A stretch of DNA of 64,000 nucleotides from Guillardia theta CCMP2712 (taxonomy: Eukaryota; Protista; Cryptophyta), in the NCBI RefSeq assembly GCF_000315625.1, contig NW_005434622.1:1-64000 (forward strand), given 5' to 3'. The translations under genes were made by a program, and so were the position numbers. Positions 56,881 through 62,529 of the stretch are shown here, piece after piece; the stretch's first letter is position 1; every line of letters starts with the position of its first letter. The notes below the pieces were generated by a model. That model did no database searches. It had not been told where the DNA came from and worked only from the letters and a program-made list of their open reading frames with translations.

Positions 56881-58069
56881 GCTCTCATCACCCCCGACAA
56901 GCCTAGGGTATCATGAGGGTGGTCTGTGGAGAATTGGGGGTGGGGTAGGGGCAGGCTCGGATATTTCCGGCAGACAATGTTCTCAGGGCTTGTGGCGGTC
57001 AACAGCTTGAAATGGTGAGAGGAGGAGAGGAGGAGAAGAGAAGAGAGGAGGAGAAGAGAAGACAAGGAGAACATCGCGATAAGAGAGTTACTAGAGCTCA
57101 GTCTGCGAAGACGAAGATGGAGGGGAGAGCAAAACTTACGAGAAGCGTAGCGAAGGGGCAAGGTAGCATGGAGACGTGGGGTTGAGCAGGTCGGTGGAAC
57201 GAGTTGGCGATAGAAAGCGCAGATGCAAAATGGGAAGGAAGATGGAGAGCGATGTTGACCAGGAACCCAGGAATGGTTGGTAGGTGTGTGCGAACATCGA
57301 TTCCAAGATTTGCTCCAAAGATTTTCATGAAAGTAATCAGAGAAAACAATAGATCGGTTAGATGACCCTTGTGCAATGTGAGGGTAGAAAGGACCTATGT
57401 TCATATAATATCAGGATGCGCATCCTTCGATAACCTGTGTTCCCCCTTGAATTCATTCGCAAATCACAGGTGGGATCATGGATCAGCTGAGTTGTACAAT
57501 GGAGATGACAGGTGAAACACAAGAATGACATCAAAGACAGAAATCGTTGAATGTTTGATTGCAGCTACATCTCATCGTTCAAGTACAAGCCTGTCTACTC
57601 TCACACCGACAAGGAGAACAAGGAAGGGGATTCTTCCTTGTATGCCAACAGGTTGATCCGGGATGACTTTCTACAGTCTGATTGTTATTGGCAGTTTTCA
57701 GAGCAAGAAGAAGCAATCGGAGTACTAAAGCGTCTTGGCAACATCTGCTGAGATGAAGTGAGAAGGATGTGGTGGAGTTAGATCTTTAAGGGTAGTTTTT
57801 CATTTCAAATCAATAATTTGGAAGACTGTGAGTGACGTTGCGGAATTGGAGATGTTGAGAATTTGGAGTCTGAACGCGACTGAAACCCTTAAGCTGAAAA
57901 CATCAAGACTGCGCTGCTGATAGCTCCACACGCCTGTATGCATGTGCAACCGCCCAGCTCGTCCTTGTTGTTATGACAGTGTTGAAACCTCACAGTTGGT
58001 TCCTGTTGAGTCGAGATAGATAGGATTCCTTGAGGTTATCGGACTGATCGCAATCGTCTTGAGCGCGAA

Positions 58070-59234
58070 TCATTGCAGAGAAGCAAGATCGGCACGAACT
58101 CTCTCCATGCGGTGAATCTCAAATCTTATCCACCGCTCCATGTCCTGCAACCGTTCAGCATAAGTATCAAATGCTCTATGGGAAGAGAGTGGGAGGAAAA
58201 TCAAGCACAGACAGGAGCATGCGCAATGACGCGCAAGCACAAGGCACGGACAAGGAAGGGGAAGGAGAATGACCTCGGCCTCGTGGCTCTTTTCCAGGTA
58301 TCTGCTCGGCTTGATCTGCATGCCTCGGTATACGAGATATCTGGAAGAGCATTAGAAGAGGAGGAGGATGCGACGCAGAAGCACATGGAAGGATAGGAGT
58401 CGAACTGAATCATCTTGGACCACCTCGCCGGGATCTGCAAAGAGAGTAAGGGGAGAAGAGAGGAAGGGAGGAGAGCGAGGAAAGGAGGAGGAAGGCGGGA
58501 GGGAGAAGGCGGGAGGGTGCATCTGAGTAGGAGACACCTTATTTTGGTAACCGTCCATCCTGGCCAGCTTGATTGGTCCTGGATTGGTCCACGAGTTTGG
58601 ATCTGGAAACACAATGAGTCATTGCGACAATGCGATGGGGGAGAGGGAGAGGAGGGGAGACGGGGAGGAGGAAGGAAGAGCGGCCGTACCTCGGGTCTTC
58701 TCCTTCTCACGCAGGAAATGTGCCAAGGCATTGAACTTGGGAGTTGAGAAGTCAGAGGAAGCGACTCACGAAAGAAGATGGGGAGAGGAAGGAGACGGGT
58801 GAGAAAAGGAGAAAGGAGAGAAAGGAGAACAAGAGGAGCAGGAAAAAGGAAAAGTGGAGGTGCTGGAAGGGAGAAAGGGCTGGGGCGATGAGGCGGGTTT
58901 TAGAAGGAGGGAGGGAGAGGGAGGACGAAAGGGAGGGAGACAGAGAGGGAGGGAGGGAGAAGGCAGGGAACCTTTGGTTCAAATTGACGGCAATGAGGGC
59001 AAGAAGGATCGTAAATCTCCAGCAGTAAGTTCTACCGTCACGATCGATCAATGAGGAAGCAGACCTGGGGCTCTAAATTGCGACAATGGGGACACCAAGG
59101 GGCGTAGATCTCCAAGAGAATATGCTACAAAGATCGGCAAGAGGATGTGAGGAGGAAGACGATGGTAAGGATGATGATGATGATGGTAAGGATGACGATG
59201 ATGATGGTAAGGATGATGATGATGATGGTGATGG

Positions 59235-59303
<69 letters not shown>

Positions 59304-62300
59304 GCAACGGGAGGAGGAGGAGGTCGAGGCGAATAATGATGATTGAGGTGAAAATGATCATAATGAATGGAGGATTGAGATCGAAGAGGTGTGACTTGAA
59401 GGAGAAAGGAGCGAGTGTGGGCAGCACAAGGAGATGACGATTCGCAAGTCCATCAGCGAATTGTCGAGTTCAGGAAGTAGAGATGGTCTTGGTGGTAGTG
59501 GAGGAGGGTGATGAAGAGGACGAAGAGGAAGAGGAAGGCAAAACAAGTTGTCAACCTTGGTGCTCTTCACCACCTCCTCTTCGAAGTTCTCCTCAGTGAC
59601 CTAACGCAAAAGATCAGCGCGGAATGAAACCGGGAGAGCATGAAGAATCAGATCAAGTAAGAAGAGACTGGAGCATCTAGGAACGATGACAAGGAGTGGA
59701 GGAGAGGGGAGGAGGGCCAATAGCTACCTGAGTGATTCCTGCTTCCTTTGCTCGTCGTAGGGCTCCTTGTTCCCACACATACCCTTCTCGACTCGTCAGT
59801 AGCCTGATCCACCTCTCTCCCTCCCTCTCCCTCTCCCTCTCTCCTTCCCCTTTTCCTTTCCTGTTTTCTTCGCCTCTCCACTCTTTTTCGCTCCCCATCA
59901 TCACCACGGCCACAAACACATCAGCACATTCCATCCTTCTTCTCCCACCCCCCCCCCCCCCCCCCCCCCCCCGGCCTCTTTCCCCTCCTTCCTGCTCTTT
60001 CTCCCCCTTCTCTCGTCCAAGTCCCACCTGCCCGGACTCGCTCCGCCTGCTTCATCATTCCCTCCATCGACTGCAGCCAGTCAAGGAGAATACGCAAGGA
60101 GAGGTTGGGGAGGAGGTGACGAAGAATAGCAAGAGGAGGAAGTGAGGAAGGGATGGGAGGAGGAGGAGTAGGAGGATATCATTGTGGTGGAGGAGGAGAG
60201 GACACCTCCGCATGCTGCGAGTGGTGGATGCCGCACTCAGTCCTGTTCTCTCCCAGCCATCTCCCAGCTCTCTCACCCTATCAGGGCAGGTCAGAGGCAA
60301 GGAGAGAAAGTCAGGAGCTACTGGCAAAAGAGGATGGGTGGTAGGAAAGAGGACAGGGAGTAAAAACGAGAAGAAATGTGATGGGAGCAGGATGGATGGA
60401 GGAAAACCATTTCTGGAGTCGCCTTTGCAGTCGACATCTCATCCCCGATGGAAAAATATCCCTGCAACAAAGATCGGCTCTCCGTCTTCTTCTCCTTCTC
60501 CTTCTTCTGCTCCTCTCCTGCTGACCTGATCGTGCAACTTGTTGTAGGGGATCTGATTTCTCGTCACGTACTCCCACACATCTTCCCTGCAAGGAGGAGG
60601 TCAGGAGCAGGAGGAGAGGCGGAGAGGCGGTAACCTGCTCCAATGCGTCAGAGGGTTAATCTTTAGCCTTCCGTCCCCCTTGTCTATCTCGAAGAGCTTG
60701 AGAAACTGTCGCTCCCCCCCTGCTCGCAGATTAGCACCAATATGGCCGACTATGCAAACAGAACCTTGCGATCGCCTCCTGCCTGTGATCCAAGCCACGA
60801 TCTGTCGACATATCAGGCACATACCAGCATCCCATCATCGTCATCATCTCAATCAACAGTCATGCATTTCTCATCCACAAACTTTCTTCATGCACAAAAG
60901 TTTCAGACCCTCAGTTCGTTGAGCGCTCGTTTCATGGGCTCGATCTTGGAAACAAAGTCGTACAGCAGCGGGTCTCCGCGGTAGAGTTTGCTCCCTTCAA
61001 TCAACACTCAGTCAAGGCCCGGAAGGATAGCACGGAGCTCGCGTACCATATTTCGTCTCGAACTCTTTCCTAGTGGTTGCATGCTTGCAGCGGTACACCT
61101 TCAGCTTGTCCAGGTGATAATGTGCCTTCGCCTGCAGCCCCTACGTGTCAGCGCAACACTGGCGAGGGCCGTCAGCTCAGAGCAGCTGACCTTGTCTATC
61201 AGGTCGTAAGTCTCGGGGAAGAGATGTAGAGTGTCAATAGTGACGACTTCCGCTCGGTGAATGAGTTTCTCTTTGACGAGAATGTCGGTAATGACAAGTC
61301 CAGACAGGCCGAAACTTGTAACCTGACGGAGACAACAAATCGAATCAAAAGAGCATCACCGATCACAGTGCTCGTTTCAAGTCTTCGAGTTTGAAAACAT
61401 GGCCCTGCACATCAACAAAGACGTCTCGATCCCAACTTCCATCCCTCCTTCACTCTGCACCCCCAACACACTGAGGAGGCAGTGAACAATCATGTTCGCA
61501 GCAATTCGACACAACAAAACTTCACAACATCATCATAATATCAGCATCGTACTTGCGCCCATCGTCGTCGCGGCAGGACCCGAGCAGCCCACTTCAAGAC
61601 CTCAACAGGCTGCTGGGAGATCGGAAGGGCGCCAAACTGATCTGATGTCAGAGAGAGAGGAGGAGACAACGAGAGAGGAGGAGACCTTCGAGTTCAAGAA
61701 GTCTATGGCGTCCGAAAGGGTCGATGTCCCCGTGTCCTCGAGCTGCAGTTGAGTGAGAAGAGAGCAGGTTCTGTTCTTCCTCGTACCACTTCCAGCAACT
61801 CCGACGTGACAACCCCAGTTTGCTTCGCATGCTTCCTGACATGGTCGTTCGATCCGCTTTGCAAGCCTGAGCAGCGTCAAGTACGGCTCTTGACCCTTCA
61901 CTGGTATGTCCTCTCACCTGTGCCGAAGGTGTGCGAGTGAAAGTTTACTTGATACCTTGATAATTGTTACACCCCATCGATACCCGGATCCGCCCTCACT
62001 GCTCATCGTCGCCCGAGACTGACACCCACTTATACAGAGAGGATAGGGCCAACAGACTGTGAGTTGGAATCACACGGGAGGAAGGCTAGCACGGCACACA
62101 GTCTTGTTACCACAGCCCCACCGCAATGCACACTTTGAAGATCCACCTACCACCAGGCAGTGAGACGCTTCTCCACGCAAAGATTCGCAGAGGAGAACAT
62201 GTCGGCATCAGTGTCATCATAAGTTAGGAGCTCTCACCATCGGTTCCCATATCTCCTCATCCCCAAAAGCTTCTCCATCTTTGCAGTCCGCTTTTTCCAT

Positions 62301-62476
62301 TCCTGCGTGGAATGGACTGAGGAGGACGAGGAAGGAGACAAGGGGGTTTGAGACGGAAGAGGAGCACAGCAGAGAGCATGAGAAGGAAGATGATCGACAG
62401 GAGAGGAGCCGGTGGGGTTGGAGGAAGAGCTCCTCATCCTCGCACGCGTTTCCACCTTCCCCAGCTCTCCTGCCAT
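58070..62476 (-). CDS. PAPS/APS reductase lacking Fe-S ligands (CysH/APR-B type) fused to a C-terminal PDI-like thioredoxin domain, many introns
   Basis: Spliced: VTSFGLSGLV, IDTLHLFPETY, YDFVSKIEP, AWITGRRRSQGGER, RLKINPL, IPYNKLHDQGYFSIGD, GERAGRW...ECGIH. Then VTEENFEEEV, CPHC exon(s), IKLARMDG, FDSYPSM. 5' exons and start uncertain. Confidence 0.88.
58972..59124 (-). other. Candidate mutually exclusive exon pair (59065-59124 and 58972-59031)
   Basis: Both are 60 nt, phase 0/0 and AG...GT flanked. They encode HILLEIYAPWCPHCRNLEPQ and NLLLEIYDPSCPHCRQFEPK. Confidence 0.8.
59159..59303. repeat. (GAT)n microsatellite inside the intron upstream of the exon pair
   Basis: Directly visible, with ggtaag interruptions. 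Confidence 0.95.
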
Positions 62477-62529
62477 GCGGCCCACGTCGCCCAGATCTGT
62501 GGGCAAGCAATTCTGAGGCGGGCATGTAA

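What the first reader, a model, noticed from the sequence alone, without database searches (positions are those of the whole stretch)
58972..59124. Tandem duplicated exons that swap the thioredoxin active site (WCPHC vs SCPHC) of a sulfate-reductase fusion: candidate mutually exclusive splicing
Seen: two minus-strand 60-nt phase-0 exons, each AG/GT flanked. Exon A (59124-59065) is HILLEIYAPWCPHCRNLEPQ and exon B (59031-58972) is NLLLEIYDPSCPHCRQFEPK. Either one alone joins the upstream exon VTEENFEEEVVKSTK (59600-59556) to the downstream FNALAHFL exon and completes one Trx fold; both together would duplicate the beta2-CxxC segment. The spacer is only 33 nt, shorter than the roughly 45-55 nt introns elsewhere here, and has an in-frame TGA if retained. 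The DNA has diverged at many silent positions while LLEIY, CPHCR and EP are kept, suggesting selection on both. Known: a too-short intervening intron is a classic steric mechanism for mutual exclusion, and the Trp before CxxC shapes Trx redox and partner properties. Inference: splicing toggles two redox modules on a sulfate-assimilation enzyme. I know of no description of this.
Basis: partly seen in the sequence, partly recalled or inferred. Interest (0 to 1): 0.88.

Follow-up and report, generated by a model that had tools for sequence, protein, structure and literature searches.

The report
Mutually exclusive thioredoxin active-site exons
In the cryptophyte alga Guillardia theta, a sulfate-assimilation enzyme gene carries two tandem copies of the 60-base exon that encodes its redox active site, and transcripts contain one copy or the other, giving a WCPHC and an SCPHC enzyme, of which only the first is in the reference annotation.

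Summary
The window is Guillardia theta CCMP2712. The gene is GUITHDRAFT_164091: a membrane anchor, an APR-B-type APS/PAPS reductase domain without an Fe-S cluster, and a PDI-like thioredoxin domain.

Exon A (59124-59065, WCPHC) and exon B (59031-58972, SCPHC) are both 60 nt, phase 0 and AG/GT-flanked. They are 13/20 identical in protein and 39/60 in DNA, and 14 of the 21 DNA differences fall on third codon positions.

Spliced RNA contigs from two studies each contain an A-only and a B-only form with identical upstream and downstream flanks. The A share is 32% in one run and 57% in the other. A third run and a full-length 2277-nt cDNA carry B only. No A-to-B joint and no form lacking both was seen, but this is contig-level evidence, not read counts. 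The locus is unique in the genome.

The 33-nt spacer is shorter than all 23 working introns of the gene (minimum 44 nt). It puts exon B's likely branch point 17 nt from exon A's donor, which fits steric exclusion.

Both isoforms model as intact thioredoxin folds. The functional consequence, the regulation, and the presence of exon B in relatives remain untested.

This is a new instance of a known splicing mechanism, in an unusual lineage and at a catalytic site.

The parts
59065..59124 (-). Alternative exon A (60 nt, phase 0-0). It encodes strand beta2, the WCPHC loop and the start of helix alpha2 of the thioredoxin domain. This is the only form in the reference protein XP_005829432.1.
   Evidence: 118-nt A-only contigs in X1 and X2; joint 58735>59065; P0044; model.
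59032..59064 (-). 33-nt GT..AG spacer between the two alternative exons. It has an in-frame TGA at 59040-59038 and a YTRAY-type branch-like motif TTGAT at 59051-59047, whose A at 59048 lies 17 nt from exon A's donor.
   Evidence: shortest of 23 working introns is 44 nt; branch-like motifs lie 10-17 nt before the 3' splice site in most introns of the gene.
58972..59031 (-). Alternative exon B (60 nt, phase 0-0). It covers the same structural segment but with DPSCPHC. It is absent from the reference annotation.
   Evidence: B-only contigs in X1, X2 and X5; P0045 and the L009 cDNA; model.
59556..59600 (-). Constitutive upstream exon (VTEENFEEEVVKSTK). Its donor at 59556 joins either A or B.
   Evidence: (identical 28-nt loose end on both the A and the B contigs).
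58690..58735 (-). Constitutive downstream exon (FNALAHFLREKEKTR...). Its acceptor receives either A or B.
   Evidence: (joint 58735>59065; record 6 joins 58735 to 58972).
58070..62278 (-). Whole coding region of GUITHDRAFT_164091: 25 exons including both alternative exons (24 in any one transcript), 503 aa. It comprises an N-terminal hydrophobic anchor, an APR-B-type PAPS_reduct domain, a linker and a thioredoxin domain.
   Evidence: (exact spliced alignment of cDNA L009).
60206..60277 (-). Exon encoding the reductase catalytic motif (GERAGRW...TECGIH).
   Evidence: the motif definition comes from PMC2275785.

Best explanation
Exons A and B are a tandem-duplicated pair of mutually exclusive exons in the Guillardia theta gene for a membrane-anchored, Fe-S-free (APR-B-type) APS/PAPS reductase fused to a PDI-like thioredoxin domain.

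Shown: every informative transcript contig carries exactly one of the two exons between the same flanking exons. This gives two 503-aa proteins that differ only in the 20 residues forming strand beta2, the CxxC loop and the start of helix alpha2 (YAPWCPHCRNLEPQ versus YDPSCPHCRQFEPK).

Inferred, about 0.6: exclusion is steric. The donor at 59556 chooses between two acceptors 93 nt apart. If A is chosen, its donor cannot pair with B's acceptor, because the spacer is 33 nt and B's likely branch point is 17 nt from A's donor, so it joins 58735 instead. If B is chosen, A is removed inside a 524-nt intron.

Inferred, about 0.5: the switch changes how the thioredoxin module resolves the reductase's Cys-S-sulfonate intermediate or how it is re-reduced. 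Exon B replaces the aromatic or hydrophobic residue before the CxxC (W, Y, F, L or M in every relative) with Ser, and the small residue at -3 with Asp.
For: - **Sequence:** the anatomy is as described, and B is the unique strong match to A in the window.
- **Short contigs, run X1:** a 118-nt B contig has depth 291 and a 118-nt A contig has depth 139.5. Both have the same upstream loose end, which is the reverse complement of the end of the 59556 exon, and the same 58735 flank.
- **Short contigs, runs X2 and X5:** X2 shows the same bubble from another study, A 14.7 and B 10.9. X5 has a 1867-nt contig with B only.
- **Depth balance:** A plus B depth is about that of the flanking contig, 431 versus 316 in X1 and 25.6 versus 32.6 in X2. 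This leaves little room for forms with both or neither exon.
- **Full-length cDNA:** L009 is 100% identical to the window exons and carries B only. P0045 (B) and P0044 (A) are otherwise identical.
- **Single locus:** the stretch occurs once in the 87-Mb genome.
- **Age and selection:** third-position differences between A and B are 14/20, against 0.408 across the orthologue pair (binomial p 0.008). dN is 0.22. Splice sites, frame, both Cys, the Glu at -6 and the Pro are all kept.
- **Spacer length:** 33 nt, against a minimum of 44 nt in the gene's 23 working introns. The donor-to-branch-like-motif distance is 17 nt, against about 33 nt in the 44-45-nt introns.
- **Fold:** both isoforms model as the same thioredoxin fold, pLDDT 91.7 and 91.5.
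- **Family comparison:** the -1 residue is W/Y/F/L/M and the -3 residue is A/S in all 13 other sequences, exon A included.
- **Literature:** the Trp-Cys-Pro-Phe-Cys loop lines the modelled GSH groove in AtAPR1 (PMC6827007). Mutating Trp31 lowers human Trx-1 activity (PMC11939457).
Against: - Mutual exclusivity rests on assembled contigs, which drop rare variants. The one raw-read RNA run placed only 10 reads, none on the cluster, so low-level transcripts with both or neither exon are not excluded.
- The runs are labelled RNA only by guess, although the spliced joints show they hold RNA.
- Either combined or skipped inclusion would stay in frame, so nonsense-mediated decay cannot enforce exclusion.
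- The minimum spliceable intron length in G. theta was taken from this one gene only.
- Exon B was not found in any other species. The closest relative is known only from one A-form cDNA (L010), and a more distant relative's genomic contig (L018) has a single larger exon with no duplicate.
- No biochemical data exist for either isoform.
- The isoform ratios come from three runs whose conditions are unknown.
Confidence: 0.8

Rival explanations
1. Both isoforms are made, but the choice is unregulated competition between two acceptors, and the two proteins are functionally equivalent. On this view the redundancy is neutral rather than a redox toggle.
For: No condition-linked switching was shown. 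Ratios come from only three runs. Both models are the same fold with equal confidence. The CPHC motif itself is unchanged.
Against: Synonymous sites between A and B are saturated, while frame, splice sites and catalytic residues are intact. This is hard to explain for a redundant copy. The amino-acid changes in B fall on two positions that are otherwise constrained across the family. The A share differs widely between runs: 32%, 57%, and undetected in X5.
Confidence: 0.25
2. Mutual exclusion is real but is enforced by something other than spacer length, such as competing RNA structures or exon-specific splicing factors.
For: The 44-nt introns in this gene show that G. theta tolerates short donor-to-branch distances, so 33 nt is only 11 nt below the working range.
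Against: The 201-nt region around the cluster folds no better than shuffled sequence (z = +0.70). No docking/selector-like inverted repeats link the upstream intron to the exons. The only YTRAY branch-like motif in the spacer is 17 nt from A's donor.
Confidence: 0.2
3. The A and B transcripts come from two different loci, alleles or strains, or from an assembly artefact, and not from alternative splicing of one gene.
For: The runs carry two organism labels, and the contigs are assemblies.
Against: Both exons lie 33 nt apart in one contig, and the 201-nt stretch occurs once in the genome. Both forms occur within the same run, in X1 and again in X2, with identical flanks. cDNA L009 is 100% identical to the window in all other exons.
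Confidence: 0.02
4. One of the exons is a decaying pseudo-exon, or both are constitutive and included together.
For: The reference annotation uses only A. Including both would stay in frame.
Against: B is the majority form in X1, the only form in X5 and the form in the full-length cDNA. A is the majority form in X2. No A>B joint was seen. B has an intact frame and splice sites despite saturated silent divergence.
Confidence: 0.02

Closest known systems
Steric-hindrance mutually exclusive exons. The classic case, from established knowledge, is alpha-tropomyosin exons 2/3. About 9% of human MXE clusters have a donor-to-branch-point distance below 50 bp (PMC5740500).
   Same: It is a tandem pair of homologous exons of equal length and phase. 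The intervening intron is too short, and the downstream exon's branch point lies close to the upstream exon's donor. Exactly one exon appears per transcript.
   Different: The organism is a unicellular cryptophyte with 44-nt working introns, so the critical distance is much smaller (17 nt against about 33 nt). The exons are multiples of three, so there is no frameshift or NMD back-up. The mechanism is inferred here and has not been tested.
APR-B-type APS reductases of chromist algae with a C-terminal thioredoxin moiety (Patron et al. 2008, PMC2275785).
   Same: It has Y....K and GD...T in place of the Fe-S Cys pairs, an ECGIH catalytic motif and a C-terminal thioredoxin domain. The best solved matches are PAPS reductases and moss APR-B.
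   Different: The residue before ECGIH is Thr, not Lys or Arg. All relatives found here carry an N-terminal hydrophobic anchor. No splice-variant active site has been described. Substrate preference (APS or PAPS) and location are untested.
C-terminal redox domain of plant APR (AtAPR1, PMC6827007).
   Same: It is a thioredoxin fold fused to a sulfonucleotide reductase, with a WCPxC motif at the start of helix alpha2. In AtAPR1 the Trp-Cys loop lines the modelled GSH groove.
   Different: The plant enzyme has an Fe-S reductase domain and a CPFC motif, and no alternative active-site exon is known. Here the motif is CPHC, and one isoform replaces Trp with Ser.
Catalytic a-type domains of protein disulfide isomerases (PDIA3, PDIA4, P5, ERp46).
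   Same: These are the best structural and sequence matches of the thioredoxin domain. They share the (Y/F)APWCxHC context of exon A.
   Different: The domain is fused to a reductase rather than to b/b' domains. The SCPHC context of exon B is seen in none of the relatives aligned here.

Membership tests
Cluster of mutually exclusive exons (criteria of the WebScipio/Kassiopeia predictions, PMC3923563) | The exons are neighbours, of similar length, with the same splice phase and reading frame. | tested here: met
   Both are 60 nt, phase 0-0 and AG/GT-flanked, and they lie 33 nt apart.
Cluster of mutually exclusive exons (criteria of the WebScipio/Kassiopeia predictions, PMC3923563) | The exons are homologous in sequence and encode the same structural segment. 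| tested here: met
   13/20 aa identity. Both align to Pfam Thioredoxin positions 21-40. They give identical secondary structure in both models.
Cluster of mutually exclusive exons (criteria of the WebScipio/Kassiopeia predictions, PMC3923563) | Transcripts contain exactly one exon of the cluster. | tested here: met
   A-only and B-only contigs share the same flanks in X1 and X2. X5 and the full-length cDNA are B-only. No A>B joint and no skip-both loose end was seen. This is contig-level evidence, so rare forms are not excluded.
Steric-hindrance type of mutually exclusive splicing | The distance from the upstream exon's donor to the downstream exon's branch point is below the spliceable minimum. 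| tested here: inconclusive
   The spacer is 33 nt, against a minimum of 44 nt in the gene's 23 working introns. The branch-like TTGAT lies 17 nt from the donor, against about 33 nt in the shortest introns. The branch point was not mapped, and there is no genome-wide intron survey.
APR-B-type sulfonucleotide reductase (PMC2275785) | Y/FxxxxK and GDxxxT/S replace CCxxRR/K and GCxPCT, so there are no Fe-S ligands. | tested here: met
   YDFVSK and GDEMST are present in P0045 (definition).
APR-B-type sulfonucleotide reductase (PMC2275785) | The active centre is K/R-E-C-G-L/I-H. | tested here: met
   RTECGIH is present, so ECGIH is kept, but the preceding residue is Thr. E, C, G and H are invariant in the alignment.
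APR-B-type sulfonucleotide reductase (PMC2275785) | The enzyme reduces APS (or PAPS) to sulfite. | not testable with these tools
   This needs an enzyme assay. Only homology to solved PAPS/APS reductases is available (E 3.5e-57 to 7rge; 4bwv also matches).
Thioredoxin fold, PF00085 | A thioredoxin-type beta/alpha fold with CxxC at the N-terminus of helix alpha2 and a cis-Pro loop. | tested here: met
   Pfam PF00085 is assigned to P0001 and its cluster. The models have pLDDT 91.7 and 91.5. Foldseek matches PDI a domains at E 3e-9. The Pro of the cis-Pro loop is invariant.

The most novel reading that the evidence does not exclude
The splice choice is a regulated switch of the enzyme's redox partner or potential. 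One form is thioredoxin/PDI-like (Trp before CxxC). The other has a small hydroxyl residue there, as some glutaredoxins do, plus an added Asp. On this reading a unicellular alga retunes the committed step of sulfate assimilation post-transcriptionally. It would also be a validated case of steric mutually exclusive splicing that arose independently outside animals, and other G. theta genes may use the same trick.
Probability: 0.3. Interest if true: 0.75.

Novelty: new member of a known kind. Interest (0 to 1): 0.6.

Why it matters
Documented mutually exclusive exons are overwhelmingly from animals, and reports outside animals are described as rare (PMC3923563). This case in a cryptophyte is supported by transcripts and sits exactly on the catalytic CxxC segment of a redox domain. 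It therefore gives a natural pair of enzymes that differ only around the active site.

It also corrects the reference annotation. The isoform missing from the annotation (B) is the more abundant one in two of three runs and is the form in the full-length cDNA.

If the two forms differ in reductant use or redox potential, this would be a new layer of control on sulfate assimilation in marine algae. It would also be a compact system for testing how the residue before CxxC tunes thioredoxin-fold chemistry.

Tried and rejected
- **First gene model:** my hand-built model skipped the exon at 60277-60206, which made it look as if the catalytic Cys was lost (KEAGIT). The homologue alignment and the cDNA showed that the ECGIH exon is present, so that idea is rejected.
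- **RNA structure:** folding of 58950-59150 gave z = +0.70, and the inverted-repeat search found no docking/selector-like pairs.
- **Raw RNA reads:** run X19 gave only 10 reads, all at the 3' end, so there are no read-level junction counts.
- **Read laying stretch:** I kept the (GAT)45 repeat at 59170-59303 out of the laid stretch by choice. The 59556 junctions were therefore seen as loose ends and directly only in cDNA L009.
- **Search for exon B in other species:**
  - The protein search found only 5 relatives.
  - The cluster of the closest relative has no B form.
  - The metagenome scan returned 59 loci, but the close relatives were left out.
  - The nearest genomic relative, L018 at 48% aa identity, has one larger exon with no duplicate.
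  - The G. theta paralogues L001 and L002 each have a single WCPHC.
- **Literature:** nothing was found on this gene or on this splice event.

Full report
**What is in the sequence**

On the minus strand, exon A (59124-59065) encodes HILLEIYAPWCPHCRNLEPQ and exon B (59031-58972) encodes NLLLEIYDPSCPHCRQFEPK. Each is preceded by AG and followed by GT. The two exons are separated by a 33-nt GT..AG spacer with an in-frame TGA at 59040-59038.

The similarity is far beyond chance. Of 65,639 stop-free 20-mers in the six frames of the window, exon B is the only one with 13/20 identity to exon A, and the next best has 7/20. Both exons align to positions 21-40 of the Pfam Thioredoxin profile.

**Organism and gene**

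A search with the 44-aa exon at 61322-61191 found full-length relatives. The 90% cluster of the best hit contains XP_005829432.1 / EKX42452.1, hypothetical protein GUITHDRAFT_164091 of Guillardia theta CCMP2712. The assembly size of 87.1 Mb in 669 contigs is consistent with that genome.

A 2277-nt cDNA contig, L009 from a JGI sample, is 100% identical to the window. It aligns exactly as 24 exons with canonical splice sites. This gives a coding region from 62278 to 58070 and a protein of 503 aa.

The protein has four parts:
- an N-terminal hydrophobic anchor;
- a PAPS_reduct domain;
- a linker;
- a thioredoxin domain.

The reductase domain has YDFVSK and GDEMST where Fe-S-containing APS reductases have CCxxRR/K and GCxPCT, and it keeps ECGIH. 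By the criteria of Patron et al. 2008 (PMC2275785) it is therefore an APR-B-type enzyme with a C-terminal thioredoxin moiety, a form known from chromist algae.

The best solved sequence matches are PAPS reductases and moss APR-B for the reductase domain, and PDI a-type domains for the thioredoxin domain.

**Transcript evidence**

I laid Logan contigs and reads of four runs on 57900-59160. I kept the (GAT)45 repeat at 59170-59303 out of the stretch. The contigs are spliced, with CT..AC joints that match the cDNA, so they hold RNA.

| Run | Study | Exon A | Exon B | A share |
|---|---|---|---|---|
| X1 | P1 | 118-nt contig, depth 139.5 | 118-nt contig, depth 291.1 | 32% |
| X2 | P2 | depth 14.7 | depth 10.9 | 57% |
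| X5 | P4 | not in contigs | in a 1867-nt contig, depth 70 | not detected |

- In X1, each 118-nt contig has the same 28-nt loose end on its upstream side. That loose end is the reverse complement of the last bases of the 59556 exon. Each also has the same 28 nt of the 58735 exon on the other side.
- A joint 58735>59065, which skips exon B, is listed for X1 and X2.
- X2 shows the same two-armed bubble as X1.
- In X5, exon B is joined on both sides within the long contig.
- No 59065>59031 joint was listed, and no loose end at 58735 that would indicate skipping of both exons.
- The summed A and B depths are close to the depth of the flanking contig: 431 against 316 in X1, and 25.6 against 32.6 in X2.
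- cDNA L009 shows the 59556>59031 and 58972>58735 junctions directly.
- Its protein P0045 is identical to the annotated A-form protein P0044 outside the alternative exon and the mis-predicted N-terminus.
- The 201-nt stretch holding both exons occurs once in the genome, so the two forms come from one locus.

The limit of this evidence is that contigs drop rare variants. The only raw-read RNA run placed 10 reads, none of them on the cluster.

**Age and selection**

A and B differ at 21 of 60 bases: 5, 2 and 14 at codon positions 1, 2 and 3. dN is 0.22 and dS is saturated.

The orthologous cDNA of a close relative, L010, is 87% identical in protein and carries an A-type exon. It differs from G. 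theta at 41% of third positions over the rest of the coding region (dS 1.16, dN 0.064), and at 7/20 third positions within exon A. The 14/20 between A and B exceeds that rate (binomial p 0.008).

The duplication is therefore probably older than that species split. Even so, exon B keeps its frame, both splice sites, both cysteines, the Glu at -6 and the Pro at -2. This argues for purifying selection on both copies.

I could not find exon B in another species:
- The relative is known only from one cDNA.
- A more distant relative's genomic contig, L018, encodes this segment in one larger exon with no flanking introns and no duplicate.
- The two G. theta paralogues each have one WCPHC.

**How exclusion probably works (inferred)**

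The 23 working introns of this gene range from 44 to 244 nt. Three are exactly 44 nt and none is shorter. The spacer is 33 nt.

Most introns of the gene have a YTRAY-type motif with its A 10-17 nt before the acceptor. In the 44-45-nt introns this puts the donor about 33 nt from the motif. In the spacer, the only such motif (TTGAT, A at 59048) is 17 nt from exon A's donor.

This is the arrangement known as steric interference, where the donor-to-branch-point distance is too short (PMC5740500). The decision would then be a choice by the 59556 donor between two acceptors 93 nt apart. An included exon A is forced to join 58735.

Folding and repeat searches gave no sign of competing RNA structures. 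Because both exons are multiples of three, nonsense-mediated decay cannot be the enforcing mechanism.

**What the switch may do (inferred)**

Both isoforms model as the same thioredoxin fold with equal confidence (pLDDT 91.7 and 91.5). The alternative segment forms strand beta2, the CxxC loop and the first turns of helix alpha2.

In all 13 other sequences aligned, exon A included, the residue before CxxC is W, Y, F, L or M, and the residue at -3 is A or S. Exon B alone has Ser and Asp at these positions.

In the solved plant APR1 redox domain, the Trp-Cys-Pro-Phe-Cys loop lines the groove in which glutathione was modelled (PMC6827007). Replacing the equivalent Trp lowers human thioredoxin-1 activity (PMC11939457).

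In sulfonucleotide reductases, the thioredoxin module resolves the enzyme's Cys-S-sulfonate intermediate and is then re-reduced. This is established knowledge; PMC1175818 appeared among the search hits but I did not read it. A change in partner preference, Cys reactivity or redox potential is therefore the most likely consequence. None of this was measured. The different A shares in three runs hint at regulation but do not show it.

**Comparison with what is known, and novelty**

Tandem-duplicated mutually exclusive exons and steric exclusion are classical mechanisms. APR-B/thioredoxin fusions in chromist algae are also known.

I found no paper that mentions this gene or an alternative active-site exon in any APS/PAPS reductase or thioredoxin-fold protein. 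Surveys of G. theta splicing report exon skipping and intron retention only (PMC6142364).

I rate this a new member of a known kind. It has added interest because it lies in a cryptophyte and on a catalytic motif. In addition, the reference annotation lacks the isoform that is more abundant in two of three runs.

**What did not work**

My first hand-built gene model missed the ECGIH exon and wrongly suggested a lost catalytic cysteine. The homologue alignment and the cDNA corrected this.

Noticed in passing
window 62238-62488 (-): The reference protein XP_005829432.1 (518 aa) starts 15 residues upstream through a predicted intron. The cDNA L009 is colinear with the genome here, so the supported start is the ATG at 62278 (MEKLLG..., 503 aa).
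   Followed up: partly
L001 (G000:C10:490915-494442) and L002 (G000:C44:500576-504100): Two G. theta paralogues have the same anchor, APR-B and thioredoxin architecture (38-43% identity). They encode the whole reductase domain in single open frames, whereas the window's gene has 24 introns. This is a striking difference in intron density within one family and one genome.
   Followed up: partly
all full-length relatives (P0003, P0008, P0010, P0016, P0025, P0037 and others): Most full-length members of this reductase-thioredoxin family that I read carry an N-terminal hydrophobic segment. This suggests a membrane-anchored or secretory-route location, which is unusual for a sulfate-assimilation enzyme. 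Location was not examined.
   Followed up: no
window ~52898 (+): A CPYC glutaredoxin-like motif (VILYRDKAAWCPYCEKVWLH) is the next-best match to exon A in the window. It probably belongs to a separate glutaredoxin or GST-like gene.
   Followed up: no
window 59170-59303 and 59944-59972: A (GAT)45 microsatellite lies in the intron before exon A. A run of 29 G (on the minus strand) lies in the intron after the 60070-60028 exon.
   Followed up: no
L009:2101-2277 / window 56964-57692: Past 57692 the cDNA contig continues with a 42-nt gap without canonical ends and two further joints down to 56964. A 70-aa gene is called on the opposite strand there. This is probably a merge with the convergent neighbouring transcript.
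   Followed up: no
same genome, another contig (note s1-439785): Another first-stage note proposes mutually exclusive exons in the class II PRPP synthetase of this genome. If true, such exons may be recurrent in G. theta. I did not check it.
   Followed up: no
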